A stretch of DNA of 64,000 bases. Source: Octopus sinensis. Its lineage: Eukaryota. The notes beneath the pieces were generated by a model. That model was not told the DNA's origin, ran no database searches, and was given only the letters and a program-made list of their open reading frames with translations. Positions 27,549 to 60,961 of the stretch are shown here, in pieces (position 1 is the first letter of the stretch; every line of letters begins with the position of its first letter). The stretch spans positions 33,976,001 through 34,040,000 of the forward strand of contig NC_043002.1 of NCBI RefSeq assembly GCF_006345805.1, read 5' to 3'. Made by a program: the position numbers and the translations under genes.

Positions 27549-27592
<44 letters not shown>

Positions 27593-29330: not shown

Positions 29331-29644
29331 ATTACCTCCACCTTAGCGAAGGCAGAGGTATTATTTTCAGTCTTGTTTGTTTGTTTGTCCGTGGGCAAGA
29401 TATCTCAAGAACTGCTGAATGGATTCATATGAAACTTTCAGGGATCTTTGGCCTTGTGACTGGCATGAACTGAATAGAATTTGGGATTGATCTGGTACCA
29501 GACAAAGATTCTGGATTATTTTTCCTGCTTTTTTTTTTTACTTAATTTTTGAGAGTGGTCGTTTTTATAAAAATCATCAGCTGATCGTTGAGAGGACGTT
29601 GGTGTTGCCTCGGCAGAGGTTTGCACTCTTTGAGTGCTCTTGTT
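29331..29644 (+). mobile_element. Helentron/DINE-1-like non-autonomous element
   Basis: 5' subTIR ACCTCCACC, nearby inverted GGCAGAGGT, (GTTT)n, 3' GGCAGAGGT, hairpin GCACTC-TTT-GAGTGC, ending in TT. Confidence 0.7.
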
Positions 29645-30763: not shown

Positions 30764-30806
30764 GTCCTTTTCTGTAGAAGAGCATAGGCTCGAAACGTAA
30801 AAGACT
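30764..30806 (+). ncRNA. Degenerate minimal hammerhead motif
   Basis: CUGUAGA-A-GAGC-AUAG-GCUC-GAAAC-GUA-AAAGAC; core differs from CUGANGA at position 6. Confidence 0.4.
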
Positions 30807-30911
30807 TTTTCTATTCCTAGGTGTTATATTAATACATCTGTTTGTTTTGTACACCACCTGTCTTCGTTTTTGTTGTCTTTTTTGTAAACTCTCCCTGTAT
30901 ATATATATATG

Positions 30912-31279
30912 TATAGCGAAAGCGAAATCGAATTGAACCAGCCAGGATCCCTGGTCTGGTGGTACGTAAAAAGCACTATCCGACTCGTGGCCGATGCCAG
31001 CGCCACCTCGACTGGCTTCCGTGCCGGTGGCACATAAAATACACCAATCCGACCGTGGCCGTTGCCAGCCTCGCCTGGCACCTGTGCAGGTGGCACGTAA
31101 AAGGCACCCACTACACTCACGGAGTGGTTGGCGTTAGGAAGGGCATCCAGCTGTAGAAACATTGCCAGATAAGACTGGAGTCTGGTGCAGCCTTCTGGCT
31201 TCCCAGATCCCCGATCGAACCGTCCAACCCATGCTAGCATGGAGAACGGACGTTAAACGATGATGATGATGATGATGAT
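30912..31279 (+). mobile_element. SINE family C, long CpG-rich copy
   Basis: Internal repeats of GTGGCACGTAAAA-like units and a (GAT)n tail. Confidence 0.85.
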
Positions 31280-33366
31280 GAGGGAGAGAGAGAGAGAAAG
31301 GCCTGTGGTAAAACGTTTGTTCCCCGACCACATCATTCCAAGTTCAGTCCCACTGCATGATGCCATGGGTTTGTGTCTTCTACTATAGCCTTGAGCTGAC
31401 CAAAGCCTTGTAAGTGCATTTGGCAGATGGAAATTGAAAGAAATCCATTGTATGTATATGTGTGTGTGTGTTTATCTCCCAACACTGCTTGACAACCAGT
31501 GTTGGTGTGTTTATGTCCCTGTGTCTTAGTGGTTCAACCTAAGAAACCAATAGCATAAGTACCATGATTTTAAAAAATAAGTCCTGAGGGCAATTCATTT
31601 GACTAAAAATTCTTCAAGGCGGCACCTCAGCATGGCCACAGTCTAATGACTGGAGCAAGTAAAAGATAAAAGATATTTATATATCAACAACACATATACT
31701 CAACAGTATAGTGACTAAATTTCTTATATACTTATATTATTAATTATACATATTAATTAGCTAGTGTTAATTATAAATTGATGTTATAATGTATGTGTAT
31801 ACAATTTTAATTATGCATTGCTAGAACCAATTATATATAAGTATTGATTTCTCCTTATTTGTCACAATATGTTGATGTGTTACTGTTGAACATCTGATAT
31901 AGTGATATTTGGGCCCTACTTAATACAAATGATATGAAAGGTGACAATTGGATTCAAAATCAGGTCAGGGACAGTTCATCTGAAGTTTACTTCCCTTCTA
32001 TACCACTCACCTTATTTATGTTTTATTAATTAAATATTAATAATCTAATCATATTAATTTTATTTATACATTTGTATTTTCTCATGACGGCGTAGCTAAA
32101 AGTCTTTTTTTGAAATTTGGACATTTGTACATTGTTTGGTGATCGTTATACATCAGTGCATTTTCTGCTGCTAACCATTCAACTGTGAAGTGGGTGTGGC
32201 ACTGCAGTCACTCTATTGTGCCATGTTAGACAGCAACACAACTGGGTTGACTATGCTTTTCCTCATGTCCACATAGGTTGGATGAGTCTGCAGTACTATG
32301 ATACATATCATTACTACACCACTTGGTTTTTTTGTTATTTCATTTGTAGGGAGCCTGACAACCTAATTTCACACCTCTTCACATTTACTTCATGTTTTCC
32401 TTGGTCTTCCGCTACCTAACTAGCCTTTCTGTTACCACCACGACTAACAACTCTCACCATTCAATCGCATCACATACCTTTCAGTCACATGTCTGCGGAC
32501 ATCTTTCCTAAACAGCTTCCCTGTTGCCTCATTTCTATCCCACCTGAGTCAACTTGACCCTATCCATAGTGTCACACTTTCTTATTCATGCGTGTCTTAT
32601 ACAGTCTGTCATTTACGTTGAGTTAGATGCAGGTTTGTCCAGATGGTTAAAAAGTTCTCTCCATAACCATATTCTTCAGAGTTCATTCCAACTATATGGC
32701 ACAGTTGTTCAGTGTTTTCTACTAAAGCCTTAGGTTGACTGATGCCTTGTGAGTGGAATTGGTACTCAGAAACTATAAGAAACCTATTGTGTGTTATTTA
32801 TAAATGTGTGTGTGTGTGTGTGTGCTTTTTTTATAGAAGCTGAGAAATGTTCACCCAAACTTTTTGAGTTTCACATAAACATTCATCAGATAGTTGTGAA
32901 AATCACACATCTATACATATTTGAATGTATGTGTGTGTGTGTGTGCACATATCATCATTATCATCATTGTTTGATGTCTGCTTGCCATACTGGCATGGGT
33001 TATATATATATATATTTTTTTTTTCTTTACTACCCACAAGGGGCTAAACATAGAGTGGACAAACAAAGACAGACAAAGAGATTAATTCGATTACATCGAC
33101 CCCAGTACGAAACTGGTACTTTATTTATCGACCCTGAAAGGATGAAAGGCAAAGTCGACCTCGGCGGAATTTGAACTCAGAATGTAACGACAGACGAAAT
33201 ACCACTAACGTTTCTGCCAGCTTGCCTTATATATATGTGAGTGCCATGTTAGAACACCTAATACTGCATTATTAGCCTCAAAGGATCTTTCATATAGGCA
33301 GTTGATGCATAAAAGCACACACAGAGATCATAACAAGTGAAATTGGTCTGTCATGGGCTCTGGAAT

Positions 33367-33410
33367 TCCCATATCACATGATTTTGTTCTATTGGAACTC
33401 ATCAGTAAGG
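33367..33410 (-). ncRNA. Hammerhead motif with G12-to-A change (probably inactive)
   Basis: Minus strand CUGAUGA-GUUC-CAAUA-GAAC-AAAA-UCAUGUGAU-A-UGGGA. Confidence 0.45.
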
Positions 33411-36189
33411 AGGACCAGGTGACTACATGCTAACCAAATCTTACTGCTACAGTATATAGAATTTCATCATCTTTTCAAATGCTGATGTCACAGCTGGCTT
33501 ATTAAAAATTAATTATTAGTGACAGAAGTAAAAAGCACCATTCAAGCATGGTTGATGCCAGTGCTGCTTGACTGGCCCTTGTGCTGGTGACACATAAAAA
33601 GCACCTACTACATTCTTGGAGTGGTTGGTGTTAGGAAGGGCATCCTGCTGTAGAAACTCTGCCAGATCAGACTGGAGCTTGGTACAGCCTTCTGGCTTGC
33701 CAGTCCTCAGTCAAACTGCCCAACCCATGCCAGCATGGAAAGCAGACCTTAAACGATGATGATGATGATGATGATGAATTTTGTCTGCTATGATCTATGT
33801 GTGTGCTTTTATGCATCAAGCGCCTATATAAGAGAATCTCTCTCTGCTAATAACATAGTATTTGGTGTTCTAATAAGGTGTCCAAGTTGTGCTGGCTATA
33901 AAGATTGCCTTTTCGTATTGATACTGCTTTCTGTTGCCAATAATTTCTAATAAAGCCTTCTGTCTATTTGCAACATCAGCATCTGAAAATATGCTGAAAG
34001 TTTGTATATTGCCTAGAATATAAGCAGTGAGAGGAGAAACACAAACACATACATGCATGCATGCATACAAACATACATACACACACACACACACATACAT
34101 ACATATAATAAAAACTGACAAATGAGTTATCTGCTATTACTACAATTGTTCCCATTAAGAGTCCTTATTGTAATGTAAACAGGGCACAGTCAGTTTCTAG
34201 TATGCACATATCCGTGGAATAAGCTGCCGGACGAGATAGTGAAGATGCCGACGACCGCTCGGTTCAAAGTCTCTCTTGACCAGAAATGGCCTGAACTCTT
34301 TGCATGAACACCCTCCCTGTACATAACTCCATGTCCCCCTAACTTAACTTAACAACTTAACAGCCCTGAACTCCTCAGGCTCACTAAATAAAAAAGTGAA
34401 CAGTGACATGTTAATTCCTCAACAGATCATCAGCCAAACGCATCTGTTTTTATTATGTTTTTACACCATGCTTAAGGTTCCATTCATCATCGGATACTTT
34501 TGGACATTACTAGAGTTGCAGATTACCAAATGACGGTGATTTCCCTTCCTCGATGCATTCCTGTGCTATGAAAATGGATTACTTAAACTTCCTGATTTGT
34601 ATCATTCTGTTTACCCAATAGTTGTAGTGTACTTCACTCTAATATGCCTGGACCCTTTGTGTATACACTGTAATCAAATACCTCTCACTTTCTCTGTGTG
34701 TGTATATATATATATATATATAGGTGCCTGGTTAGAAATCTGGATACTGCGTTATTAGCCTTGAAACGGCCATAATGTATTAACACCTGTACATCCTTGT
34801 TACTTATATGTGTGTATACATATTATCATCATCATCATCATCGTTTAGCGTCCGTTTTCCATGCTAGCATGGGTTGGACGGTTCTACTGGGGTCTGTGAA
34901 GCCAGAAGGCTTCATCAGGCCAGTCAAATCTGGCAGTGTTTCTACGGCTGGATGCCCTTCCTAACGCCAACCAATAAGTAATTATTCCAACTTTGGGTAT
35001 AACGCAACCAAATGTACTATATCCCACCTGTAAGGGACAGATGCAGGATGGGTCAAAATGATCATTGTGCTGAATAAAGATTCTGGTTAAATCCATTTTC
35101 CAGCATTTCCCTCATTCATGATATGTGTGTGTGATATTGTTATTCTATTCCATCTGGTACCTAATTTGTTTCACTCATTGCTGTTGGTTTCTAATTAGAA
35201 ATAATAGATTATTTACTCATTGTTAATGGACAAGACCTAGTGAACACCCTTAGTAATAGACAGTCAATAGAAACGTTGGACTAATTATTTTTGTGGCCTA
35301 TTCTTACACACTGGTGTATTCACAGCCAAATGTGTGTATATATGCCTGCTGATTGTCAGAAATCAACAAATCCTTTTTACCCACCGACACATACACACTT
35401 TAGCTTCAACACACCATCAAATTGCCCCCTCCCTCTTTTGATAAAGAAAACCACACCATCACACAATCTTATCAAAATCGTTATGTTTTTTTTTTTTATT
35501 GATCAATTGTGATATTTGTTTTTCATTTCTCTTCCTGAAATATCCAAATCAGTTTTTTTTATTTATTTTATCACATTTTGTTATAAGATGGTACTCTTTC
35601 TTCCTTTTCTGTCTTAATCATTGCAGTCATTTGGCTGCGGCCATGCTTGAGCACTGCCTTAAAGGGGTTTTTAGTCAAAGAAATCAAACTCAGAACTTAT
35701 TCTTTGTAAGCCTAGTACTTATTCTATCATTCTCTTTTGCCATTCTGCTTAGTTACGGGGACATAAATATGCTAACATCAGTTGTCAAATGATAGTGGGA
35801 GGACAAAGCCACACACATACATATATATATATAAATGACAGGCTTCCAGTTTCCATCTACCAAATCCACTCACAAGGCTTTGGTTGTTGGCCTGAGGCTA
35901 TAGTAGAAGACACCTGCTCAAGCTACCACATGGTGGGACTGAACCCAGAATTATGTGATAGGGAAGTGATGTTCATGGTGGTGGTGGTGGTGGTGCTGGT
36001 AATCGTGACTGGTGATGGTGGTGATAGTGTCAGTCTTGGTGGGGTTTATGATGATGATGTATGTAATGATAACTTCAAGCCTCATTAATAGCAGGGATAT
36101 GAGTATTTAAATTTTTGCATACCTTAATGTCCTTTCGCACCACCCCCACCATTTTTCTTATTCCCATATACCTATTAGTAGGACATCAG

Positions 36190-36810
36190 GCTGGTATGTG
36201 GTAAGTATAAAATTCTACCAAGTATAAAACATCTACTTCAACTATAGCAAGTGTTTATATTGTACCTAGTACAAAATACCTATTTTAACTATAATTAGTA
36301 TTTATACTCTATTGTACCTAGTATAAAATACCTGTTTCAATGATACCTACAATTTATATTGTAGTGTGCCGAGTATAAAATATCTAGTTCAACTATAGTT
36401 AGTGTTTATTTTGTATTGTCAAAGATCAAAACTCCTTTCTGAGTGATAAAGCTCATAAAGCCAGTTTCCTGGATTCTGTGGCGATATAATTTCCTCCTGG
36501 ATGGGACACCAGCCTGTTGCAAGATAACTTGTTTTTGCCAACTGAGTGAACTGGAGCAATGTGAAATGAAGTGTTTTGCTCAAGAATACACTGGTCCAGA
36601 AATCAAAGCCACAATCTTATGATCATGAGTGCAACACCTGAACTGCTAAGCTACATTCCTCCACATTCTGTACTACACCTAGTATAAATTACCTATTTCA
36701 ACTATAGTTAGCATTTATATACTCTTTTGTACCTAATATAAGTACTTATTCCAACTATAGCTACTCTTTATACTCTGTTGTACTTAGTATAGAATATCTA
36801 TTTCAACTAT
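36190..36810. repeat. Degenerate ~45-50-bp minisatellite interrupted by a family D SINE (~36450-36665)
   Basis: Recurring TACCTAGTATAAAA.ACCTATTTCAACTATAG unit. Confidence 0.7.
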
Positions 36811-37399
36811 AGTTGAGAATCCATCAACAATGCCATTCAAACACAAGCATCATATAATCTACCTTTCACTCTGAGCGAAAGTCTTTTTGTTGCCACCAGA
36901 AGTAATAGTTCTCTGAACTTCCTCCATCCTATTCTCATTCTAGCAATAATACTTTCAGAACATCCTCTACCACTGCTAATTTGATCAGCTAGGTAACAGA
37001 AACTATGTACCACCTCGTGGGAGCTTCCTGGGCATTTAAGAGAATCTAATTCCTGTGTGTGTCATCAGTGCTTATTGTTCCTCTGCATCTGCCACATTCA
37101 AAAATGACTCTCTCTGTTAACCTAACTGTGATTCTACTGCACCTCTTATGAGTCTACAGCTTTCACTGGATGCAGCAACTTTCCTACATATTGAGCAGAG
37201 CCATTTACTTGATGGAAAGTGAGTTTTACCTGCTTTCTTGCGAACAACAACTTTGATCTATATATATATACACACACACATATATACATATATTTACATA
37301 TTTATATATTTTACATGTAGTATAGTTTTAGAAGTGCCACCATCTATGTTATCATACTGAAAGGTAGATTAGGTGTGTTGGGGGAGTTGATGTATGCTT

Positions 37400-38830
37400 T
37401 GTATGAAAGATATGATAAAAATACGGTTTTTAGCCAAAGCCCTCACTGGTAAAGAACAACAAAACAAATTTTTCTGGGTTGGTAGCAGCAATGAAGTGGA
37501 TGGTGTAGGTATATTAATAGCTGAGGAATGAATAGATAAAGTAATTGAGATACAGAAAGTGAATGATAGGATAATTAAATTTAGACTAGCTACTGGCAAT
37601 TTGACAGTAATACTCTTTCTACTATAGGCAAAAAGCGTGAAATTTTGTGGAAGGAGGCTAGTCTATTACATCAATCTCAGTTCTCAATTAGTATTTATCT
37701 AATTTATTGACTTTGAAATGATGAGAGGCAAAGTTAACCTCAGCAGAATTTGAACTCAGAATGTAAAAACATATGAAATGCCATTAAGCATTTTGCATGG
37801 TGTACTAATGATTCTGCCAGATTTCTGCTTAATTTGACTGTAATGCTGATCCCTTTATACATACTGCAGCAAAGGCAGGCCAATCAATCAAAGGACCGCT
37901 TCTGTGTGATCCTTCAACAGACTACTTCAGTGATGAATGACAGTGTCCTCATTATTGCAACTTGTGACTTTAATGCACATGTTGGACTAAATGATGAGGT
38001 CTTCCAAACTGAACATGACAGCTATGGATATGGTATTAAGGAATGAGGAGGGATCAAGGCTCCTGAAGTTCTGTGATGCAAATCATCTAAAGATTTGCAA
38101 CACTAACTTCAGGAAATCAGCCAGCTTCTTGATCATGTATCACACAAGCAAACTCATGAACCAAACTGGCTTCATTCTCTCCAGAAAATAAGACAGATGG
38201 TTGGTTTTTGGAGAATGTGCTATCAAGCACAAGTTAATGATTAGTAACTTTAGAAGAAGAGCTCGATGGATACAGAGATTCAAGACAGTTTAGAGAAGAA
38301 AGATATGGAAGCTTAAAGAGCCATCAAACTATCAGCGTTTCAGAGATGCACAAGTTGAAACATTTGAAGAGAAAGAAGAAGAGATAGCGACTTGTAACAT
38401 AGAAGAAAATTGGGATTTTCTAGAGACAACCTGCTGAAGGCCTCAAGCCAAATGTGTGACTGGTGCGAGATCCCAACCATATGGAAGGGAAATACTGCAG
38501 TTGATAGAGTCATCTACTTCTTCTAAACTTGGATAGACTACAAGAAGAGGAGTTACATAGAAAACAAACTATGAAACAAAATAAAAGAAACAAGACATCA
38601 AGTATATTTAGCAGAGAGAGAGGAGCAGAATGAAATAACCTTGCATATATTCTGCAATGTGAGAATCAGAATTGTGAGGTGTTCAGAAGTGCTAGGTTTT
38701 GTACAAGAGAAAATTGAGATGTCATTGGGGAGATGTGTATATGAAATGATAATGTCATATTTGCTATCACTGATGTTGAAATGAAAGAGACATGGAAATA
38801 CTACAAGAGGAGTATGCTGAATGTAGACCC
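37400..38830 (+). mobile_element. RTE-type LINE endonuclease fragment, interrupted by a SINE (~37620-37825)
   Basis: FFWVG...GVGILIAE, NDRIIKFRL, CDFNAHVG, RNEEGSRLLKFCDANHLKICNTNFRK. Confidence 0.85.
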
Positions 38831-39800
38831 AACATAAGAATCAGCCATATATATATATATATATATATTATTTTCAAATTTTGGCACAAGGCTAACAGTT
38901 TTGTGGAAGGAGGTAAGTCAATTACATCGACCCCCAGTGTTCAGCTGGTACTTATTTTATCAACCCTGAAAGGATGAAAGGCAAAGTCAACCTCAGCAGA
39001 ATTTGAACTCAAAAATGTATGAGTTGATATTTGAGAAAAGTTCTTATGAATGCAATTACTACAATATATCATAGATGAAGCGTTCACCAAAACTGTGTAT
39101 AATGTTTTTAACAAAAACTGTCTCTTGATTGCGTTTGTGCTTGCATGAGGTTGCGTCAAAAAGTGTATGCATATGAGTTGTGAATACCATTTACATTGAT
39201 AATGTACATGGTTGGAACTGGAAAAGAACTTAGTGATCATATTCCAGATCTATTTATTGCTATAACAAGATTCAAAATGACAAAGATTTTGCTTAAGCCT
39301 TTAGCATCCAAGTTACTCTGTCAAATGCAATGCTTGTTTATTCACATTGTTTTTAGATAATCATGCATTATCGGGGGGGGGGGGGGGCTTTTTCAACCAG
39401 TTACCCCAATATATATATATTTACACTGATGTTACCCCCTTGATTTGAAAGGAAGAAAATAATAGATTCTTAGAATTCAAAAGGTTTATTGAATCTATTT
39501 ACACGTTCATTACATTAACAGATTCAATGTTGCCAGAAGAAACATTTTTGTCATTACCAGGAACATGTTTTTTATGTAATTTTACTTATGTCTAATGAGT
39601 CCTCATTACTCCCTAGAATTTCATTTTTACCCCACTTGGGGTAATTTACCCTGGTTCCCTTACCCCTGGTTTAAAATGATACTGTAGGATAGGGGTGAGA
39701 GGCTGCACCTGGCTGATTTGAACATAAAACCAATAGAATATTTCTGTAGAAAATGGCTGGTTTAAATGCTAAGAAGGTTAAGAAACATAGAGTGGCTATA

Positions 39801-40200
39801 GGTGCAGGAGTGGCTGTGTGGTAAGTAGCTTGCTTACCAACCACATGGTTCCGGGTTCAGTCCCACTGCGTGGCATCTTGGGCAGGTGTCTTCTGCTATA
39901 GCCTCGGGCCGACCAATGCTTTGTGAGTGGATTTGGTAGACGGAAACTGAAAGAAGCCTGTCGTATATATGTATATATATATATATATATATGTGTATGT
40001 TTGTTATCTGTGTTTGTCCCCCCTAGCATTGCTTGACAACCGATGCTGGTGTGTTTACGTCCCCGTCACTTAGCGGTTCGGCAAAAGAGACCGATAGAAT
40101 AAGTACTGGGCTTACAAAGAATAAGTCCCGGGGTCGATTTACTCGACTTAATGCGGTGCTCCAGCATGGCCGCAGTCAAATGACTGAAACAAGTAAAGAG
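39801..40200 (+). mobile_element. SINE family B, CpG-rich full-length copy
   Basis: Closely matches 7756-8195. Confidence 0.85.
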
Positions 40201-42783: not shown

Positions 42784-43611
42784 TCCTTCCCTTCTTTCCT
42801 GAGCGTCACTAATACTTTAATTGTTCCACGTCCTCGCGTTGCTGTGTTTTTTCTCTTTTTTTCTGTGTTTTCTTGTTTGGATTAACTATATATATATATA
42901 TATATATATATAATGCTCGAAATGAGGAGTAGATAGGCAGCTGACAACTGATGAATGGTTGTTCCTTATGTTACTTGTCCTGTTTCCATTTGTTTCTCTC
43001 GTTGTTTACATATTTAACTAATTTGTTCTCATATTTCATGTCGTTTACTGTTTGTGATGTCCTGTACCCATATATGCATATATCATCATCATCGTTGACC
43101 GTCCGTTTTCTGTGATAGCATGGGTTGGACAGTTTGACCGGGTTCTGGGAAGCCAGGAGGCTGCACCAGGCTCTAGTCTGATCTAGCTGTGTTTCTACAG
43201 CTGGATGCCCTTCCTAATGCCAACCACTCCATGAGTGTGTTGGGTGCTTGGGTGCTATATGAAGTAAAAGATGGCCATAGGAAGAGCATCAAACCATAGA
43301 AACCAAACCAAAATGGCCTTTGAAGTAAGACATGGTCTCTGATCCATTTAGGAGGGTAGTATTTCCAAATAAGAACTAACTCAGGTCATGATGATCTGTC
43401 AAACCGCTATCTAGTAAAGAAGTAAAATATGGGAAATGCTGGTGATATATATTGCTTGAAGAATCATACTTAGTGATGGTGTCATATTAATAATTGTGTG
43501 AATCATCAGCTTCAAATGAATATATGAATTTTATTATATACATTGAATACTTGTTCTCTTTTTGTATATCTAAACATCTTGTCCATCCTGTTGTCCACAG
43601 CTGAACTGAAC

Positions 43612-43746
43612 ATGGGTAATGAAGAGACATTATATGAAGGAAGCTGTAATAAACTGTTCGTCAAATTACCAGACAGATGGGAAATTGTATGGAAAGTAAC
43701 CAATTTGGTTATGGCAGTTTTCTTCTTCTTGGCTGCTTTTGTTAAT
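43612..43746 (+). CDS. TMEM220: TMEM220-family protein, coding exon 1 (MGNEE...WKVTNLVMAVFFFLAAFVN)
   Basis: Acceptor GTCCACAG ending 43600, ATG 43612, donor GTAAGT 43747; matches the recalled TMEM220 N-terminus W..CN.LMA.FF.LAA.V. Confidence 0.9.
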
Positions 43747-44192
43747 GTAAGTATTCATTGTGTTTGTGGAGTGGTGTTGTAGTAATAATGTTGTTAGTGT
43801 TATTTTTGTTGTTTAACACCAGGTCAGCCCTGATCAAGCAGAGCTATGATCTGAGTTATTGTACAAGCTATTGTACAAGAGTCAGGACAATATTTCCTAG
43901 TGTGTCCTTTTTTAAAAGAAGGTATGGTATGGTTTGATAGAAAGATTTGGCTGTTATTTCTGCATGGTCAGTGGTGGTGGTGGTGGTGGTCATGGTGGTG
44001 GCTGTAGTGTTTTGGGGAATGGTATGTTTTGGCATGGCGTAGTAACATTTCAGTGGTGGTGATAGTCATGGTTGTAGTGTTTGGGGGAGGTGTGGTATGT
44101 TGTGGCTTGGAATAGTAAAATACACCTGTTTACACCAGTACACACACACACATAGGTACACAAATATATATATATATATATATATGTGTGTG

Positions 44193-44233
<41 letters not shown>

Positions 44234-44239
44234 ACAAAC

Positions 44240-44300
44240 TCATAATATTAGTGTCAACAGCAATGAGAATAGTCAGAATGGCAGGTAACAGGTAGACTGG
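44240..44300 (-). pseudogene. Antisense duplicate of TMEM220 coding exon 3 within intron 1
   Basis: 58/61 identical to the reverse complement of 48434-48494, with the upstream acceptor region also copied. Confidence 0.9.
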
Positions 44301-44576
44301 CTGTGAACAGAGATAAAAGACATTGATATGATAGATGAACTCTCCTGTGTCTTTATTGCTACAGAAATACAATCCTCCTGTGCCAATTAGTTTAGAGAAC
44401 AATCAAGTATTTGGAAGATTTTAGTGAAATAATTAACATTTTCATGATTAACCTAGTCTTTGGAACATGACTTAAGCAAAGGTTCAAAGTTAAAATTATG
44501 ATATTTTGATTTAGATATAAACATTTTGATATTGATAGTTATATATAATAGAAACAATGTCTATCCTAGAATACTT

Positions 44577-44796
44577 ATTTCTTTACTACCCACAAGGGGC
44601 TAAACAGAGAGGACAAACAAACGGATTAAGTCGATTATATTGACCCAGTGCGTAACTGGTACTTATTTAATCGACCCCGAAAGGATGAAAGGCAAAGTCG
44701 ACCTCAGCGGAATTTGAATTCAGAACGTAGCAGCAGACGAAATACCACTAAGCATTTCACTAGGCATGCTAATGTTTCTACCAGCTTGCCACCTTT
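44577..44796 (-). mobile_element. SINE family A inserted into the left duplication arm
   Basis: Imperfect 17-bp TSD TCTATCCTAGAATACTT / TCTATCCCAAAATACTT at 44560-44576 and 44797-44813. Confidence 0.85.
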
Positions 44797-45732
44797 TCTA
44801 TCCCAAAATACTTGGTATTAAAAGAATTAACCTAATCCTATTAATGAAGCCACTGAGTGACAGAACCAATGTGAGTTAGATTAAATGTTTTTCAGTTATG
44901 ATAACTGTTCAGTGTTTGTGTAGTAATGGTGTGCCATGGCCCAGTGCCATCTACAGGAGAAGGAAGTAAAAATGCATGGTATTGTTGGGGCAGTGGTGTT
45001 AGAGTGGTTATTCTGTTAACTTACTTTTACACAAGATCAAACTTCTTATGAGAGAAAAAAGTTAACCTGACTAAATGTGTCTCTTTTAAAAGACAATAAT
45101 ATTAAAAAATAAAGGTATTTTAGCTAACATTGAATAAATATCATGTGCAAAAAAAAGATAAAGTTGACATGCTATTAAAAGAAAGGACGGGCTTATTGTT
45201 TGGAGATAAAAGGACTATCATGGACACATGTTTCTGGCCCAATAGCAGAGTCTCTCATTTCAAGGATCCTGTGAAAACGTGTCTGGTCCTGGGGAAATTT
45301 GACCTTGCTTGGCAATAGGCCAGGCATCAAACCATAGAAGATCTACCTTAACAAATTATATCTAACCCTTGCAAGCATAGAAAAATGGAAGATGAATAAT
45401 GATGATGTACTTTATTCATTCCTGTCTCATCAGTTAATCCAGTGATATCTTTTAACCAAACATCCTTTAATACATTGCATTATTATATCTAGAGATGCTC
45501 TCTTATCCAATAACAGCTATCCAATGTCCAATATATCTCTTTATCTAATAATACATATCAGATGATATCCTTTGATCTCACAACAATATCATGTAATGCT
45601 ATAAAATGTTCTGTTTTCTCAATATTAATCTTACAATGAGTAATCTATTCATCTCACTCTTTAAATGTTTTTAGTCTTATCACTCTTTATGCAGTATTAT
45701 TAATTAATCTCATTCTATATCGTTTCTTACAG

Positions 45733-45762
45733 CACAATGATAGTGATTGGTACATCTGGATT
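45733..45762 (+). CDS. TMEM220: TMEM220 coding exon 2, 30-nt micro-exon (HNDSDWYIWI)
   Basis: TTCTTACAG acceptor, GTAAGT donor, phase 0/0; matches the recalled VNDPDAEVWV segment. Confidence 0.88.
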
Positions 45763-46126
45763 GTAAGTAGGATTTATTTTAATCTTAATTTCCATCTCTG
45801 ATTATCATCTCTCTGTATTATGAATATGACTTTATCATTTCTCTTTTTAACCCTTCTTAAGTAAAACATAACCCCTTATTCTTCTGATCCCTTCTTAATT
45901 CATTGACAACAAAGTTTAGCAAAGTTTCAACATTGGTGATTCATGTTTGTGAGATACAAAACTATAAAATTATAGAAAACAATGTGTGAATCTCAATAGA
46001 CAACGGAAAGCACACACATACATATGTACATACGTACATACGTATGTATACATACATACATACATACATGCATGATTGAATGCATACATACGTACATACA
46101 TGCATTCATACATACATACATACATA

Positions 46127-46976
46127 CATACATTGTGACTAAGTATCAATAAGACATTAGGGTTAACAGAGATTGAGTGTTAATGATTAAAGTAAAGATT
46201 AAATCAGAGTAATTCATTCATTAATTATCAATATACATACACACAAGTAATATGTATGTATGTATGCATAGTCATAAAACGAGACAGATGAGTGACACCT
46301 GGCCACTGGTGGTGGTGTAACACACCATACTAATCATATCTGTCGGGCATGTGGAAGAGAGAGTAATTCGGCAGGAGGACTTAAACGACATGCAAAGGTA
46401 CATGAAGCCCTGTTACAACTACAGCCGGCTATTACCAGTAAAGGTTTTAGTTGCCAATTTTGTACAAGACATTGTAGATGTTTAGTTGGGCTAAAACGTC
46501 ACATTCGATCACAGCATGCATACATTATGGCTGCCCCCTCGTTATCGAGTATGGCCATTGCACGAAGCTTAACTGTTACTGGTGCTGTGATCGAATGTGA
46601 CTTTTTAGCCCAGCTAAACATCTACAATGTCTTGTACAAAATTGGCAACTAAAACCTTTACTGGTAATAGCCGGCTGTAGTTGTAACAGGGCTTCATGTA
46701 CCTTTTGCATGTCGTTTAAGTCCTCCTGCTGAATTACTCTCTCTTCCACATGCCCGACAGATATGATTAGTATGGTGTGTTACACCACCACCAGTGGCCA
46801 GGTTGTCACTCATCTGTCTCATTTTATGACTATGCATACATACATACATATTACTTGTGTGTATGTATATTTGATAATTAATGAAATGAATTACTCTGAT
46901 TTAATCTTTACTTTAATCATTAACACTCAATCTCTGTTAACCCTAATGTCTTATTGATACTTAGTCACAATGTATG
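46127..46976. repeat. Long inverted repeat (390/394-bp arms, 66-bp spacer)
   Basis: 46127-46516 vs 46583-46976; I count 4 substitutions and 4 single-base homopolymer indels. Confidence 0.95.
46526..46831 (-). mobile_element. 5'-truncated RTE-like LINE 3' end encoding two C2H2 fingers
   Basis: CRACGRESNSAGGLKRHA and CQFCTRHCRCLAGLKSHIRSQHQ*, then a short 3' UTR; candidate TSD ATGCATACAT at 46516-46525 and 46832-46841. Confidence 0.65.
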
Positions 46977-48433
46977 AAAACCAGTACCTCAGTCATTTGT
47001 GACACTAACTATATCTTCAATAATCACTGACTAAAACCTCATTAATCATTGACTAAAAGTTCCTTAATCACTTAGCACAAATTAAAGGTTCCTTAATCAC
47101 TATTTGTTAATCTACTTTAAACATTTGCATTAAATTATCTCTACTCTCTCTGATCTAATTTTCCTAATTACTTTCTCTTAATTTTCTTAATCTGTATTAC
47201 CTAAACTTTCTTAATCTCACTGACTTAATCTTTTTTAATTTCACTTTATTCTATGTAATTGGAAGATGTTTGAGTTACTGAAATAGCAACACACCAGATC
47301 AAATATTGTAGAGTGTTTGATTTCAATGCTCTACATTCTGAGTTCAAATCCTGTTAAAATCCATTGTTTCCACAACCCCTCTGGGCTCAACAGAATAGAT
47401 CCTAGTCATATACTGTGATTTGTACAAGCAACTGTATATCTCACATATCTTGGCTTTGTGTCAGTATTCTGTAAAAAAATTTGGTTTCAGTTCTTCTTCA
47501 TTAATCTTCTCATACTCCTGTGTGAGTTTATCCTCATCATATAATTTCTATTCTGCCCACTCTATTGCAATGACTATCAGTCCAGTTACTGGTGCAGCCA
47601 TGCCTCCCACAAATGGTCACATCTTAGTTGTTCTGCTGGATCAAGGACTGGTAGTTCTGTCTACTAATGACTATATGGTACCCTATTAGCAAAAGCATGG
47701 TATATTACAAAGTCAATTCTATGTGATGACTGTTATATAATTTCTAACTCAAGCACAAAGTGAAAGGTTTGGGATGACAGCTGTAGTTGACTAAATTGTC
47801 TCCAGGATATGACTGGTACTTATTTCATCAATCTTAGAAGGATGAAAGGCAAAGTTGACAGCTGAAGGAAATTGAGTACCAGCTCTGGAGGGATGTAACT
47901 AAATACTGAAAAACATTTAGTGTAACTCACACTGGTTCTATCAATCAGTGACTTCATTAATAGGATTAGGTTAATTCTTTTAATACTAAGTATTCTGAGA
48001 CTGACTTTGTCAAGTTATAACAAAAAGTTAGTGAAATATTTAAAATGTTTATAGTTGGATAGATAGACGAATATAACAAAATTATTTGACAAAAAATGTG
48101 AATTTTTCAATTATTTTCTGAGATTTTACAAAAACAACAAAAATTTTTTTTTTAAATATTATATATAACTATTATATATTATATATATATTATATATAAC
48201 TATCAATATCAAAATGTTTGTATTTAAATCAAAATATCATAATTTTAACTCTGAACCTTTGCTTAAGTCGTGATCTAAAGTCGTGATCATGAAAATATCA
48301 ATTATTTCACTAAAATCTTCCAAATACTTTATTATTCTCTAAACTAATTGGCACAGAAGGATTGTATTTCTGTAGCAATAAAGACACAGGAGAGTTCATC
48401 TATCATATCAATGTCTTTTATCTCTGTTCACAG

Positions 48434-48494
48434 CCTGTCTACCTGTTACCTGCCATTCTGACTATTCTCATTGCTGTTGACACTAATATTACGG
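48434..48494 (+). CDS. TMEM220: TMEM220 coding exon 3 (PVYLLPAILTILIAVDTNIT)
   Basis: TGTTCACAG acceptor, GG|GTATGT donor, phase 0/1. Confidence 0.9.
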
Positions 48495-48922
48495 GTATGT
48501 ATGTATGTATGTGTGTGTGTGTGTATTTTTATGTCTGTATATGTAACTCTGCATGTGTGTGTGTGTGATGGTTTGAACAAGTGTATAGCATTATGTCTAT
48601 TTATGTGAAAAAATGACTTAACTGTTTCGTAAATAGATATTGATAAAATAAATACAATTTGGATTGATATGTTTGACTAAACCCTTGAAGGCCAGATTCA
48701 ATGACTGAAGCCATTAAAAAAGTAAAGAAAGAAAGAATATAACATTACTGTGCAACTGTTTTATTATTATTATTATTATATAACCATCGTCATTATATTA
48801 CAATACAACCATTACTGTTGCTCGTTGGTCTATGCTATTAAAACAAGGACTATATCACCATACCACTTATAGTACTACTGTTCTATTGCTTCAGAAACAA
48901 GAAATCTATCACTGTATTACTA

Positions 48923-50202
48923 TTGGGTTAGCAAGAAAGTAATTTCATTCTTCATAAATAGATAGAGTTACAATTTTTTTTAGTGACTTTTGTCAATGTT
49001 ATGATTTTTCCCTTTTGACATTTGATAGCTGTTACTTTTAGTTTACTTTAGAAGCAAATTGCACATAATTTTTTGTTTACAACTGTTAGTTCAATGTCAA
49101 TTTTGACATGGAGTGCAAAAACAAGCATTTTTGCTATATTTTGCTTTTTTTATTTCTGTAAAGGCAAGAAAGCTGCTGAGGCTCAGAAAGAGATACGTGA
49201 AGTTTATGGTGTTGATTGCTTAACAGAACGCACGTGTCAGAAATGGTTTGAAAAATTCTGTTCTGGAGATTTTTCACTCAAAAATGACCAATGTTCTGGT
49301 CTACCTACTGAAGTTGATGACCAAATCCAAGCCATAATTAAATCTGATTGCCATATAACTGTATGAAAGATTGCAGAGAGGTTAAATGTATCATACACAA
49401 CAATTGAAAATCACTTAAAATGTCTTGGACTCGTTAAGAAGCTTGATATTTGGGTTCCACATAAATTAAAGAGATTTACTTAACTCAATGAATCAATGTT
49501 TGTGCTATGCATCTCAAACGCAATTAAATCCACCTCTTTTTTAACCGAATCATCACTGGTGATGAAAAATGGATTGTCTACAATAACATCAATTGAAAAC
49601 GACCATGCTCCAAGCATAATGAACCAGCACAAACCACATTGAAAGCTTAAATGAAAAAATAACAGCAAGTTATGCTGTCAATTTGGTGGGATTACAAAGG
49701 TGTTGTGTATTTTGAGCTGCTTCCAAAGAACCAAACAATCAATTCAGATGTTTACTAACAACAACTAATGAAACTAGAGGAAGCAATCAACAGCCAGAAT
49801 TGGCAAATCATAAAGAAATCGTGTTTCATCATGACAATGCTAGACCACAACATGCCTTTGCTAACTCGTAAAAAAATATCGGAGCTTGGTTGGGAAATGA
49901 TGTCACATCCACCATATAGCCCTGACCTTGCACCATCAGATTATCATTTATTTCGAAGTTTGTAAAATTCTTTGAATGGTAAAACTTTCAATAATGATGA
50001 TGACCTGAAATCGCATTTGCTTCAGTTTTTGGCTAAGGACCAGAAGGTCTATGAACATGGAATTGTGAAGTTGCCAAAAAGATGGCAAAAGTCATTGAAT
50101 AAAATGGAAAATATATAATTAATTAAAGTTCATTCTTTGTATGAAAAAAGAAATGCCTTTTTTTCACACTAAAAAACCGAAATTACTTTCTTGTCAACCG
50201 AA
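48923..50202 (+). mobile_element. Full-length (1280 bp) inactive mariner element in TMEM220 intron 3
   Basis: TIRs TTGGGTTAGCAAGAAAGTAATTTC / GAAATTACTTTCTTGTCAACCGAA, TA at both flanks; ATG 49108; WVPHKL, ITGDEKWI, YSPDLAPSDYHLF motifs with stops and frameshifts. Confidence 0.95.
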
Positions 50203-50511: not shown

Positions 50512-50644
50512 AAAATAAATATTGGAAGAATTTGGCGTTGGTGCACCTGCTGATGTGTTGTGCTTTCTCTGTCTACCAACTTATCATCCTACATGAAGTC
50601 TACAATGATAAATTCTCCAACCCACTTCGAGTGGAGGAAGGACG
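50512..50644 (+). CDS. TMEM220: TMEM220 coding exon 4 (ENKYWKNLALVHLLMCC...NPLRVEEGR)
   Basis: AATTGCAG acceptor, CG|GTGCGT donor, phase 1/2; conserved W K...H and EEGR. Confidence 0.92.
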
Positions 50645-53189: not shown

Positions 53190-53255
53190 AGAATTTGTTG
53201 GTCTTGCCATAATAGTTTTCTGGTTGTCTGTGTGTCGTTTCATGTCCCTGCCCAG
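53190..53255 (+). CDS. TMEM220: TMEM220 coding exon 5 (REFVGLAIIVFWLSVCRFMSLP)
   Basis: TATTTACAG acceptor, CAG|GTAATA donor, phase 2/2; completes EEGRE..GL.I. Confidence 0.92.
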
Positions 53256-54326
53256 GTAATATACTATACAGTACGTACTTTTTTTTATCATTGATCATGT
53301 TTCACTTGCCCATAGCTACATGTTGATGGGGTAACTATCCTACATGTGGTTATAGCAGCGGGACATAGTTGTACAGGTAACGACAGCAACAAAATGTGCC
53401 ACTTGTGTGTTTCTTTCCTCTTACTTTTCACATATGTTTGTTTTGTAGGTGATCTTTGTACAACTTATGATGATGTGAAGTGGACAGTTTTGTGTTCTTC
53501 ATAGTCTGTGATAGAGGTATTAGAGCCCTAGGCTGGGTCTAGGCATATTCCATGATGGATTTATGTTATTGTCTGTGTATCATTGTTGTTGTGTCTTTTT
53601 GTTACCCAAATGTAGTACCTGGGATTGCTCTGGATATGTTTGTGTTTTGTTTTGCTTTCTTTAGTATGTTTTATGTGGTGTGAATGTTTGGTTGTGCAGT
53701 ATGTAACTTCAAGTATTTTTGTCTTCAATGCATGTTAATGTTATTGAGTGGTATGCATTTGTTAAGCTGCACCATTGTCAATAATCATTGGAGAGCTGAA
53801 GAAGATCAGATGAAGAGCAGTCGAAGGAAGTGGAGGTGTGTGGCTTAGTGGTAAGGGTGTTGAACTCCTAATTGTAAGATTGTGGTTTCGATTTCTGGAC
53901 TGTGTGACACATATTCTTGAACAGTCAGCATCTACATTCTGTCTGTCTATCTATCAAACTAATATGTTTATTGGATATGTAAATATTGTCTATATATCTA
54001 GTCAAGCATCTGCACTTGTATTTATCCAGTTAGCATCTACACATCATATCTATCTACCTATCCAGTAAATGCTATCAACATGTACACAGTGTTATTGTTT
54101 TTATCTTAGACATGATGAGTGACTATATTTGAATTGAATTGATTTTATTGTTATCAATTTGAAATTATAGCCACGAAACATGTGTAGTCTAATAATTATA
54201 TACTATTTATTATTTAGTACTTTATTTAGTTTTAGGTAAATGTTTTATCGTATCTTTAATTTTTTTTCTATATGGTATGATTTAAGTATATCATTATTGA
54301 ATTGCTTCATGGTGGTTCTTCTCTAA

Positions 54327-54987: not shown

Positions 54988-55129
54988 CCTCAGTGGACAG
55001 AGAACCATAAAGGTGTTGTTTCTTTTATCTGTTGGTGTATCCTTGGTACCCCTGTTTTCCTGGGCACTCTGCTATGTTGGCAACTGGCACCAGATCTTAG
55101 GGCACTGCAAAGGAATGTTTCAATCTTGA
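54988..55129 (+). CDS. TMEM220: TMEM220 last coding exon (SLSGQRTIK...PLFSW...LGHCKGMFQS*)
   Basis: TTTTTTCAG acceptor, phase 2, TGA at 55127-55129; C-terminal P..SW and HCK as recalled for the family. Confidence 0.92.
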
Positions 55130-59548: not shown

Positions 59549-60961
59549 CTACCATTGTACAAAAGCAATCGTTTTCTTAACCCAATATCTCCATGCTGTT
59601 ATTTCAAGCATAGATGTCTTATCATTTTTGGTTCTAATAAAATTGGTAAGAGGAATTATTTGTTGTGGAGTTGATGCCTTATGTTTCTTGGCTTCACAGT
59701 GGCTTACTAAAAGAGAATATTTTGCCAACATATTACATCTCCAATATCTACAATGTGCTTTAGATTGGTCACTAGGTACTTCACACAACCACTTAGTAAA
59801 CACTGGTATCTTAAGCCATTCCTTTCGGAATTTTTTCTGGTACAATTTTGTTTTTACTCATTATAATGTAATGGGAAGCAAGTTAATAAACTGAATGTTT
59901 AATAAAAATATAAAATTGAAAACACAACTTATCAGTTTGCCGCTAACAATTCTTTCATTCGTCATTAACAATTCTTATGTTTGCTGCTTACAAATTCTTG
60001 AGGTGAAGAATACTGATTCAGGATGCAGGGTGGCCAACTTATAAATGGAAAAGTAAAATCTGCAGAAATCTTAAAACTGATATAAACCTGGGAACATCAT
60101 ATTTCGCTTCCAATCTTACATTTAATATCTAAATATAACTGCAATACTTGAAAAAAAAAAGTAAGTAGAAATATATATTTCTTTACTACCCACAAGGGGC
60201 TAAACACAGAGGGGACAAACAAACGGATTAAGTCGATTACGTCGATCCCCAGTGCGTAACTGGTACTTAATTTATCGACCCCGAAAGGATGAAAGGCAAA
60301 GTCGACCTCGGCGGAATTTGAACTCAGAACGTAACGGCAGACGAAATACGGATACGCATTTCGCCCGGCGTGCTAACGATTCTGCCAGTAAGTAGAAATA
60401 TAAAGGGGGAGACCCTGCCACCCCTGTACTTCTATACAAGATATATAATCCAAAACAAGCATGAAAAACACAGGCCTATTTTAAAACAGTCAAACTGAAA
60501 GTAAATCAGTCAACCTGTCGTGATAAAAACTCATCACTACAGAATAAAGCATTGTTAAGGTGAATTTCCATGCTTCATTCTTTGCAACATATTTACATTA
60601 TTGAGTAGTGAGCTCAGGAGCTGACATGAGTTATCTTCTCCCTTTACCTCTGAAGCAAAGTCGGGGAAGGGGCTGGAAAAGATCATAACTTGATAAACTT
60701 CCTTTTGATAAACTTTCATTTGAAGTTTAAGTGAAAGAAAATTTCAACAATAGCCAATAGAACTAAAATTTGGCTATAAGATATATTAACAAAAGTAGAA
60801 AAGGAAGAAAAAGAAGAAAAAAGGGTAACTATTGTGGAAATGCTAAATAAAATTTTAAATCTGCTATTTTCCCTGCTAAATGCTAGATTCAAAAATTTTC
60901 TGCTAAAAGCTGAAAAAGAAATGCTAGATCTAGCATAAAACATGCTACATTGGCAACCCTG
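59549..60961 (-). mobile_element. hAT-type transposon 5' relic (N-terminal zinc finger)
   Basis: YQKKFRKEW...F.KWL..V..D..KAHC..W....LAK...L..H....KH at 59549-59845; CAGGGTTGCCAA terminus on the minus strand at 60950-60961. Linking the two is inference. Confidence 0.5.
60176..60386 (-). mobile_element. SINE family A with 16-bp TSD
   Basis: AGTAAGTAGAAATATA at 60160-60175 and 60387-60402. Confidence 0.9.

What the first reader, a model, noticed from the sequence alone, without database searches (positions are those of the whole stretch)
44120..48590. Antisense copy of TMEM220 exon 3 and its splice acceptor in intron 1: a built-in complementary sequence
Seen: ~44120-44550 and ~44800-44900 are inverted copies of ~48188-48590 and ~47905-48000. 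The exon copy is 58/61 identical and ~40 nt of acceptor region is identical; a SINE later inserted in the left arm. Inference: the pre-mRNA can form a several-hundred-bp duplex that loops out exon 2 and covers exon 3 and its 3' splice site. Established: coleoid cephalopods recode mRNAs extensively by ADAR, which needs such duplexes. This could be a new editing-complementary sequence (e.g. TAC Y-to-C, ATT I-to-V) or a splicing switch; skipping exon 3 (61 nt) or exons 2+3 (91 nt) shifts the frame.
Basis: partly seen in the sequence, partly recalled or inferred. Interest (0 to 1): 0.7.

Follow-up and report, generated by a model that had tools for sequence, protein, structure and literature searches.

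The report
Inverted exon copy inside octopus TMEM220
An octopus gene (TMEM220) carries a backwards copy of its own third coding exon and splice sites in an upstream intron, so its unspliced RNA can fold into a very long double helix of the kind RNA-editing enzymes attack; the copy looks like an ordinary duplication, and no role could be tested.

Summary
The window is Octopus vulgaris (GCA_951406725.2) and the gene is TMEM220 on the + strand (Pfam PF15071, E 1.4e-21).

Left arm 44120-44576 plus 44797-44896, in the first coding intron, is the reverse complement of right arm 47905-48004 plus 48184-48586 (main block 358 nt, 89.7% identity, E 3e-137). The right arm holds exon 3 (48434-48494) and both its splice sites. 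The exon copy is 58/61 identical, and the 76 intron bases upstream are identical. A SINE with a 17-nt target-site duplication inserted into the left arm after the duplication. The arms have no other copy in the window.

In a 4.6-kb fold of the pre-mRNA, 59/61 exon bases, 40/40 acceptor bases and 7/9 donor bases pair with the left arm. All 12 exon adenosines lie in A:U pairs, and 11 edits would recode. Skipping exon 3, or exons 2+3, shifts the frame.

No RNA data or sister genomes were reachable, so function is untested. A long near-perfect helix predicts promiscuous hyper-editing, not site-selective recoding. The mismatch pattern looks neutral. The left arm must survive intron-1 splicing for the helix to form. 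Most likely this is a non-adaptive inverted segmental duplication, a new member of a known kind.

The parts
43612..43746 (+). TMEM220 coding exon 1 (ATG to donor AAT|gtaagt)
   Evidence: tblastn of P0001 100% identity; splice sites and ORF
44120..44576 (-). Left arm, block 1: inverted copy of the 3' end of intron 2, exon 3 and the 5' end of intron 3; lies in the first coding intron
   Evidence: 358 nt at 89.7% to 48188-48541, E 3e-137; outer 34 nt 29/34 to 48553-48586
44240..44300 (-). Antisense copy of exon 3 (58/61 identical; translation identical up to the last codon)
   Evidence: pairing partner = 92734 minus the exon coordinate
44301..44376 (-). Antisense copy of the 76 nt upstream of the exon 3 acceptor, 100% identical
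   Evidence: no mismatch 48358-48435
44577..44796 (+). SINE inserted into the left arm after the duplication; 17-nt target-site duplications at 44560-44576 and 44797-44813
   Evidence: unfilled site in the right arm at 47988-48004
44797..44896 (-). Left arm, block 2: inverted copy of 47905-48004
   Evidence: 96 nt, 90.6%, E 5e-33; 87/95 paired in the global fold
45733..45762 (+). TMEM220 exon 2 (30-nt micro-exon) in the loop between the arms
46127..46976 (.). Nested second hairpin in intron 2: arms 46127-46516 and 46583-46976, 98% identical, 66-nt loop, with a C2H2-finger-like ORF remnant
   Evidence: (388/394 paired)
47905..48004 (+). Right arm, block 2 (intron 2), source copy
48013..48183 (+). 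AT-rich ~170-nt stretch present only in the right arm (indel relative to the left arm); an internal loop of the helix
   Evidence: and direct reading
48184..48586 (+). Right arm, block 1: 3' end of intron 2, exon 3, 5' end of intron 3 (source copy)
48434..48494 (+). TMEM220 exon 3 (61 nt; PVYLLPAILTILIAVDTNIT); 12 adenosines, all in A:U pairs with the left arm
50512..50644 (+). TMEM220 exon 4
53190..53255 (+). TMEM220 exon 5 (66 nt; missing from the deposited O. vulgaris model)
54988..55129 (+). TMEM220 last coding exon with stop codon

Best explanation
This is a genuine DNA-level inverted segmental duplication. About 510 bp of TMEM220, comprising the end of intron 2, the whole 61-nt exon 3 and the start of intron 3, was copied in reverse orientation into the first coding intron, about 3 kb upstream. 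The copy has since decayed about 7% in unique sequence, acquired a SINE, and come to differ from the source arm by a ~170-nt indel.

Shown here: the two arms are transcribed in one pre-mRNA. Thermodynamically they form two helices of about 340 bp and about 90 bp. These bury exon 3, its acceptor and its donor, and loop out micro-exon 2.

Inferred: the helix forms only in those pre-mRNA molecules in which intron 1 is still present when exon 3 is transcribed. In those molecules ADAR, which is very active in coleoid neural tissue, would edit adenosines promiscuously in both arms. This includes the 12 adenosines in exon 3 (11 of the 12 edits recode) and the acceptor AG. Spliceosome access to exon 3 would also be hindered, giving frame-shifted, skipped transcripts.

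The arrangement is most likely a neutral or slightly costly by-product of a structural mutation, not an adapted editing or splicing device. It is the unique-sequence, exon-containing equivalent of an inverted Alu pair.
For: The repeat is real and unique in the window. The left copy carries intron sequence on both sides of the exon, so it is an unprocessed genomic duplicate.

The right copy is the ancestral one. Exons 2 and 3 are conserved in order in other cephalopod TMEM220 transcripts and match Pfam PF15071.

Arm divergence of 6-9%, plus an independent SINE with target-site duplications in one arm only, argues against an assembly artefact and shows the duplication is not recent.

The helix is stable: -499.6 kcal/mol vs -138 for shuffles, and it is kept in the 4.6-kb global fold.

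The mismatch spectrum is unbiased, with 5 wobble, 5 A:C and 5 transversions. Exon divergence (3/61) is about half of distal divergence (8.9%), as expected if only the non-functional copy is free to change.

Long dsRNA from young inverted repeats is the main ADAR substrate across Metazoa, most coding 'recoding' sites sit in such hyper-editing clusters (PMC9989829), and octopus shows the strongest hyper-editing signal of 21 species (PMC5625713).
Against: No RNA evidence of any kind was available, so neither helix formation in vivo nor editing is shown.

The 134-nt core (48358-48491) has 1 mismatch against 8.9% in the distal arm (Fisher p 7e-4; permutation p 0.005). That is more uniform than simple neutral decay predicts unless the functional copy is constrained over 76 nt of intron. 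It could instead reflect gene conversion or selection for pairing.

Presence in other octopus species, which would bear on neutrality, could not be checked.
Confidence: 0.55

Rival explanations
1. Adapted editing-complementary sequence or RNA-structure splicing switch. The left arm is maintained by selection because pairing with exon 3 directs useful recoding of TMEM220, or tunes exon-3 inclusion and hence dosage through frame-shift and decay, possibly in a temperature-dependent way.
For: Exon 3 and both splice sites are fully inside the helix. All 12 exon adenosines are in A:U pairs, and 7 of them have a 5' U or A, favourable by general knowledge of ADAR preferences. The core around the acceptor and exon is significantly less diverged than the rest of the arms (1/134 vs 24/270). 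Skipping gives premature stops. A nested 390-bp hairpin sits next to it and could recruit ADAR in the way described for editing inducer elements (PMC3479170, PMC5654063).
Against: A long near-perfect helix gives promiscuous, not selective, editing (PMC9989829). The arm is in a non-adjacent intron. There is no wobble bias among mismatches. The core conservation is explainable by constraint on the functional copy or by gene conversion (p 0.016-0.14 under a half-rate null). The SINE and the ~170-nt indel have been tolerated inside the arms. TMEM220 does not appear in the recoding tables searched or in any editing paper.
Confidence: 0.12
2. Inert in practice. Intron 1 is spliced co-transcriptionally before the right arm is synthesised, so the two arms rarely coexist in one molecule and the duplication has no RNA-level consequence.
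For: The left arm lies wholly in intron 1 (43747-45732), whose donor (gtaagt) and acceptor (tttcttacag) look strong. The right arm starts 2.1 kb, and exon 3 lies 2.7 kb, beyond the intron-1 acceptor. Tolerance of the arrangement for long enough to accumulate 6-9% divergence fits a low cost.
Against: Exon 2 is a 30-nt micro-exon. From general knowledge, that class is often recognised slowly, which would delay intron-1 removal. Excised lariats can also persist and pair in trans. The helix is extremely stable.
Confidence: 0.2
3. An intragenic hairpin-RNA locus. The helix is diced into endogenous siRNAs that target TMEM220 exon 3 in trans, like Drosophila hpRNAs born by inverted duplication of their target genes.
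For: It is an inverted duplicate of a gene fragment with >300 bp of near-perfect pairing. hpRNA loci of this origin are documented (PMC10317233).
Against: The loop is 3-3.6 kb and contains an exon. There is no sign of an independent transcription unit, no small-RNA data, and most of the helix is intronic. Rfam finds nothing.
Confidence: 0.05
4. Flanking complementary sequences that drive back-splicing (circular RNA), as with inverted Alus around circularised exons.
For: The arms lie in the introns on either side of exon 2.
Against: The only exon fully enclosed is 30 nt, too short for a plausible circle (inference). The right arm itself buries the exon-3 splice sites instead of merely flanking them.
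Confidence: 0.03
5. Assembly artefact: a falsely inverted or duplicated segment in the long-read assembly.
For: Inverted duplications can arise from chimeric long reads. The nested 98%-identical palindrome at 46127-46976 has the look of such an artefact.
Against: The outer arms differ by 6-10%, by a SINE with its own diverged target-site duplication and by a ~170-nt indel. Artefactual duplicates would be nearly identical.
Confidence: 0.03

Closest known systems
Inverted Alu (IR-SINE) pairs in primate introns and UTRs, the classic long intramolecular dsRNA substrates of ADAR hyper-editing (PMC526178, PMC5625713, PMC5080714)
   Same: Two inverted copies of one sequence lie a few kb apart in the same transcript. 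The helix is several hundred bp and about 90% paired. The predicted outcomes are promiscuous editing and interference with splicing.
   Different: The arms are not a dispersed repeat but a unique two-copy segmental duplicate. One arm is a functional coding exon with its splice sites, and hyper-editing is reported to be very rare in coding sequence (PMC5625713).
Intronic exon/editing-complementary sequences of site-selectively edited transcripts (GluA2 Q/R and R/G, Drosophila Syt1; PMC4053846, PMC5705066)
   Same: Intronic sequence complementary to a coding exon in cis. Editing would have to precede splicing.
   Different: Classical ECS helices are short, imperfect, evolutionarily conserved and usually in the adjacent intron. 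This one is long and near-perfect, sits two introns away from where it pairs, and is of unknown conservation.
GRIA4 'two inverted introns' helix and the SLC9A6 inverted-LINE exon (PMC4053846)
   Same: dsRNA built from inverted duplicated gene-internal sequence, giving edited sites within or next to coding sequence. It is cited there as an example of how an editing site is born.
   Different: In those cases editing is demonstrated and conserved across mammals. Here nothing is demonstrated.
Editing inducer elements: long intronic hairpins that recruit ADAR to nearby sites (PMC3479170, PMC5654063)
   Same: The nested 390-bp hairpin (46127-46976) in intron 2, 1.5 kb upstream of exon 3, has that architecture.
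   Different: No evidence that it acts so. It looks like a foldback copy of a low-copy element.
Drosophila hpRNA loci (PMC10317233)
   Same: Origin by inverted duplication of part of a protein-coding gene.
   Different: hpRNAs are separate transcription units with short loops and act through siRNAs. This one is inside its parent gene's intron with a 3-kb loop.

Membership tests
TMEM220 (Pfam PF15071), identity of the host gene | Significant match to the family profile above the gathering score | tested here: met
   77.5 bits vs cut-off 27, E 1.4e-21; 100% identity to O. vulgaris CAI9724648.1, named Transmembrane protein 220 in UniRef
Site-selective intronic ECS (GluA2-type) | Intronic sequence in cis complementary to the exon around the edited adenosine | tested here: met
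   59/61 exon bases paired to 44240-44300 in the global fold
Site-selective intronic ECS (GluA2-type) | Short, imperfect helix (bulges and mismatches) that confers selectivity | tested here: not met
   ~340-bp helix; 134 bp with a single mismatch over the acceptor and exon
Site-selective intronic ECS (GluA2-type) | Observed A-to-I editing at defined exon sites | not testable with these tools
   No RNA-seq access; no O. vulgaris transcript variants in the protein collection; no TMEM220 in the supplement searched
Site-selective intronic ECS (GluA2-type) | Conservation of the complementary element across species | not testable with these tools
   No other octopus genome reachable
Inverted-repeat hyper-editing substrate (IR-Alu type) | Two inverted homologous segments within a few kb in one transcript forming more than 100 bp of dsRNA | tested here: met
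   Arms 3.0-3.6 kb apart on the + strand transcript; 337 + 87 predicted pairs
Inverted-repeat hyper-editing substrate (IR-Alu type) | Arms are copies of a dispersed repeat family | tested here: not met
   No further copy in the 64-kb window, while the SINE has 10 or more. Genome-wide copy number was not testable
Inverted-repeat hyper-editing substrate (IR-Alu type) | Clusters of A-to-G mismatches in RNA over both arms | not testable with these tools
   No RNA data
hpRNA / endo-siRNA hairpin | Inverted duplicate of a gene fragment | tested here: met
hpRNA / endo-siRNA hairpin | Compact hairpin in its own transcription unit yielding 21-22-nt siRNAs | not testable with these tools
   The loop is 3 kb and contains exon 2; no small-RNA data
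circRNA-promoting flanking complementary sequences | Inverted repeats confined to the introns flanking a circularisable exon | tested here: not met
   The right arm includes exon 3 and its splice sites. The enclosed exon 2 is only 30 nt
SINE insertion (the interruption of the left arm) | Multiple dispersed copies and flanking target-site duplication | tested here: met
   Copies at 21420-21654, 60170-60388, 7379-7601, 33019-33208 and elsewhere; each with its own TSD; TSD 44560-44576 / 44797-44813. No tRNA fold or Rfam hit

The most novel reading that the evidence does not exclude
A lineage-specific editing or splicing device caught soon after birth. The inverted copy of exon 3 is kept complementary by selection or gene conversion. 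Together with the neighbouring 390-bp hairpin it drives ADAR recoding of the second transmembrane helix of TMEM220. It may also drive temperature-sensitive masking of exon 3, which lowers productive mRNA through frame-shift skipping. That would be a direct example of how coleoid recoding sites can arise from exon duplication rather than from pre-existing exonic structure.
Probability: 0.12. Interest if true: 0.65.

Novelty: new member of a known kind. Interest (0 to 1): 0.35.

Why it matters
How the tens of thousands of coleoid recoding sites acquire the double-stranded structures they need is poorly understood. Hyper-editing of long helices is reported to avoid coding sequence almost completely. 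This locus puts an entire coding exon and both its splice sites into a long, nearly perfect helix with a datable origin.

It is therefore a ready-made natural test of three questions:
- whether octopus ADAR acts on such a pre-mRNA structure before splicing;
- what that does to the protein and to exon inclusion;
- whether such structures are purged, tolerated or co-opted.

If nothing happens at the RNA level, that result is informative about the order of intron removal. Either way the finding itself is an ordinary structural variant until RNA data say otherwise.

Tried and rejected
1. Comparative genomics failed.
   - The protein search with exons 2-5 returned only the O. vulgaris model and one cluster of transcripts from a more distant cephalopod.
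   - Exact look-ups of the ORFs spanning the exon in either arm found nothing.
   - A degenerate exon-3 DNA pattern found nothing in metagenome contigs.
   - The O. vulgaris locus could not be re-fetched because the annotated gene spans 113 kb.
2. Literature: no paper combines TMEM220 with RNA editing or with cephalopods. There is no TMEM220 entry in the supplements of PMC9989829. The 2017 Cell paper with O. vulgaris editing tables is not held under the id I tried.
3. I considered the whole 44120-48586 interval as a transposon with long terminal inverted repeats. I rejected this because it encloses the ancient exon 2, its right 'terminus' is the ancient exon 3, and the 1.2-kb and 0.9-kb segments between the outer and inner repeats are unrelated.
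4. I considered one large palindromic duplication centred on the inner hairpin. I rejected it for the same reason, and because the inner (98%) and outer (90-93%) arms differ in age.
5. I found no convincing target-site duplication or flank homology around the left arm.
6. Rfam, tRNA search of the SINE and large-ORF listing gave nothing relevant.
7. I used a TMEM220 sequence recalled from memory only as a lead to find exons. All exon calls were then re-derived from database proteins.


Full report
**What is in the sequence.**
An inverted-repeat scan of 43000-50000 found these arm pairs:
- 44193-44448 / 48286-48541 (256 nt, 91%)
- 44458-44569 / 48169-48280 (112 nt, 87%)
- 44801-44896 / 47905-48000 (96 nt, 91%)
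- 44120-44182 / 48524-48586 (63 nt, 71%, largely microsatellite)

Gapped blastn joins the first two into one 358-nt alignment (44193-44550 vs 48188-48541, 89.7%, 4 gaps, E 3e-137). It gives E 5e-33 for the third. A local alignment also recovers 44120-44153 vs 48553-48586 (29/34), part of it outside the (TG)n/(CA)n runs. Apart from microsatellite matches, neither arm has another copy in the 64-kb window.

**The gene.**
- Joining the putative exons gives a peptide that matches Pfam PF15071 (TMEM220) at 77.5 bits, E 1.4e-21.
- It is 100% identical to Octopus vulgaris CAI9724648.1 from assembly GCA_951406725.2.
- Mapping that protein and a related cephalopod transcript product onto the window gives six coding exons on the + strand:
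  - 43612-43746
  - 45733-45762 (30 nt)
  - 48434-48494 (61 nt)
  - 50512-50644
  - 53190-53255
  - 54988-55129
- All six have canonical splice sites, and together they encode a 188-aa ORF.
- The left arm lies entirely in the first coding intron (43747-45732).
- The right arm covers the last 530 nt of intron 2, all of exon 3 and the first ~90 nt of intron 3.
- Exon 2 lies in the loop between the arms.
- Skipping exon 3, or exons 2+3, shifts the frame into early stops. Skipping exon 2 alone does not.

**Fine structure and history.**
- Base by base, the exon copy differs at 3 of 61 positions: T48436A (synonymous), C48492T and G48494A.
- The 76 intron bases upstream of the acceptor (48358-48433) are identical.
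- The remaining upstream intron, 48184-48357, has 15 mismatches and one 4-nt indel.
- The downstream part is a diverged (TG)n vs (TA)n microsatellite.
- Identity over unique sequence is 93.4%.
- Because the copy carries intron sequence on both sides, it is a genomic duplicate, not a retrocopy.
- The right copy is the original. Exons 2 and 3 occur in that order in other cephalopod TMEM220 transcripts and in the family profile.
- The interruption of the left arm is a SINE (44577-44796) with many copies in the window.
  - It is flanked by a 17-nt target-site duplication (44560-44576 and 44797-44813, 15/17).
  - The single unfilled site is in the right arm (47988-48004).
- Separately, the right arm has ~170 AT-rich bases (48013-48183) with no counterpart in the left arm.
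- These differences make an assembly artefact very unlikely for the outer repeat.

**Does the RNA fold as proposed?**
- Both arms are on the transcribed strand.
- Co-folding 44193-44560 with 48180-48541 gives -499.6 kcal/mol with 337 intermolecular pairs, against -138 +/- 5.7 for shuffled partners.
- The second block adds -121.8 kcal/mol.
- In the minimum-free-energy structure of the whole 44050-48650 segment (4,601 nt, -1923 kcal/mol) the outer helix is retained:
  - 337/358 bases of the main block pair with the left arm.
  - 59/61 exon-3 bases pair.
  - 40/40 bases upstream of the acceptor pair.
  - 7/9 donor bases pair.
  - 87/95 bases of the second block pair.
- All 12 adenosines of exon 3 sit in A:U pairs.
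- Eleven of the twelve possible edits are nonsynonymous: Y>C, I>V four times, T>A three times, D>G, N>D and N>S.

**Is there evidence that the structure is used or selected?**
I could obtain no RNA data.
- The protein collection holds no O. vulgaris transcript-derived TMEM220 variants.
- No paper links TMEM220 with editing or cephalopods.
- TMEM220 is absent from the recoding tables in the supplements of PMC9989829.
- No sister-species genome could be reached.

From the sequence alone:
- Mismatches between arms show no preference for wobble-compatible changes. There are 5 giving G:U, 5 giving A:C and 5 transversions in the upstream intron.
- The exon is about half as diverged as the distal arm (4.9% vs 8.9%), as expected if only the non-functional copy is free to change.
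- The 134-nt core 48358-48491 has one mismatch.
  - This is significantly below the distal rate (Fisher p 7e-4).
  - The permutation p for such a run is 0.005.
  - It is only marginal (p 0.016, or 0.14 if the two mismatches at the exon's 3' end are included) under a null where the functional copy does not change.
  - Constraint on the functional copy, a gene-conversion tract, or selection for pairing all remain possible. An outgroup would decide.

**Most likely mechanism.**
Literature read here:
- ADAR's main substrates across animals are long helices formed by evolutionarily young inverted repeats.
- Most apparent recoding sites lie in such hyper-editing clusters, not at selectively edited positions (PMC9989829).
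- Octopus has the strongest hyper-editing signal of 21 species examined, yet hyper-editing almost never touches coding sequence (PMC5625713).

A 340-bp helix containing 134 bp with one mismatch belongs to that class, not to the short imperfect ECS class (PMC4053846, PMC5705066). I therefore expect promiscuous editing of both arms and some masking of exon 3 wherever the helix forms.

Whether it forms is a kinetic question.
- The left arm is in a different, upstream intron with good splice sites.
- It must survive until polymerase has gone a further 2.1-2.8 kb.
- The 30-nt size of exon 2 may slow intron-1 removal. This point is inference from general knowledge, not tested.

My best reading (0.55) is a non-adaptive inverted segmental duplication. 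It makes a conditional hyper-editing and exon-masking substrate with a small net effect.

Rivals:

| Rival | Confidence |
|---|---|
| Helix practically never forms | 0.20 |
| Adapted ECS or splicing switch | 0.12 |
| Intragenic hpRNA-like siRNA source | 0.05 |
| Back-splicing driver | 0.03 |
| Assembly artefact | 0.03 |

**Context in the window.**
- Inverted pairs of at least 80 nt within 6 kb are common here: 21 others besides the two blocks of this repeat (23 rows in all).
- Nearly all of them are 70-89% identical and TE-like, with one short 95-nt pair at 97%. None covers an exon.
- What is unusual is therefore not an intronic helix. It is that one arm is a functional exon with its splice sites.
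- Between the arms sits a second, stronger hairpin (46127-46516 / 46583-46976, 98%, 66-nt loop, 388/394 paired).
  - It carries a remnant ORF with two weak C2H2 fingers, below Pfam cut-offs.
  - It has one 84%-identical relative on another O. vulgaris chromosome.
  - It has the architecture of the long intronic hairpins reported to recruit ADAR to nearby sites (PMC3479170, PMC5654063). Nothing shows that it does so here.

**Comparison and novelty.**
- It works like an inverted Alu pair, but the arms are unique sequence and include a coding exon.
- It resembles classical ECSs only in being intronic and exon-complementary. It fails the 'short imperfect helix' criterion.
- The GRIA4 inverted-intron helix and the SLC9A6 inverted-LINE exon (PMC4053846) are the nearest documented cases of editing sites born from inverted intragenic duplication.
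- I file it as a new member of a known kind.
- Interest is moderate-low (0.35) until RNA data exist.
- If the adapted-device reading were true (about 0.12), it would be a clear, datable example of the birth of a coleoid recoding structure (interest about 0.65).

Noticed in passing
window 46127-46976: Near-perfect palindrome in TMEM220 intron 2 (arms 390/394 nt, 98% identical, 66-nt loop), flanked by (ACAT)n. Each arm carries an ORF remnant with two weak C2H2 zinc fingers, below Pfam cut-offs. One 84%-identical predicted protein (P0007) lies on another O. vulgaris chromosome. It could be a foldback copy of a low-copy element, an ADAR-recruiting hairpin, or, given its near-identity, a long-read assembly artefact.
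   Followed up: partly
window 53190-53255: A 66-nt in-frame exon (REFVGLAIIVFWLSVCRFMSLP, a transmembrane segment of the TMEM220 profile) is missing from the deposited O. vulgaris model CAI9724648.1 (166 aa). A 188-aa product of a related cephalopod transcript (P0005) includes it, so the deposited model is probably incomplete.
   Followed up: yes
window 53253-53261; locus L001: Reading through the exon-5 donor gives CCC AGG TAA (P R stop). Products ending ...SLPR (142/151 aa) dominate the related species' transcript assemblies (P0003 on 67 contigs). This suggests a common intron-5-retaining or early-terminating TMEM220 isoform that lacks the last transmembrane helix.
   Followed up: partly
window 44577-44796 and e.g. 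21420-21654, 60170-60388, 7379-7601, 33019-33208, 12900-13064: An abundant ~220-nt SINE family (consensus starts TATTTCTTTACTACCCACAAGGGGCTAAAC), each copy with its own target-site duplication. ARAGORN finds no tRNA-like fold and Rfam has no family for it. Differences of the left-arm copy from the consensus are mostly at CpG sites (by eye).
   Followed up: partly
window 43983-44118: A 70-nt tandem repeat (1.9 copies, 78% matches) immediately abuts the outer end of the left arm. I found no target-site duplication or flank homology that would explain how the inverted copy was inserted.
   Followed up: partly
window 48013-48183: A ~170-nt AT-rich stretch present only in the right arm. It is either a deletion in the left copy or a later expansion in the source intron. 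It forms an internal loop opposite the SINE.
   Followed up: no
window 7100-13600 and 27400-40200: Dense clusters of inverted TE-like pairs (100-370 nt, 70-89% identical, 0.1-6 kb apart) lie upstream of the TMEM220 coding exons, within the annotated 113-kb gene span. They would add further dsRNA to the same primary transcript if that span is transcribed.
   Followed up: no
window 48358-48491 vs 44243-44376: A 134-nt tract with a single mismatch is embedded in arms that are otherwise about 9% diverged. This is compatible with a gene-conversion tract between the inverted copies.
   Followed up: partly
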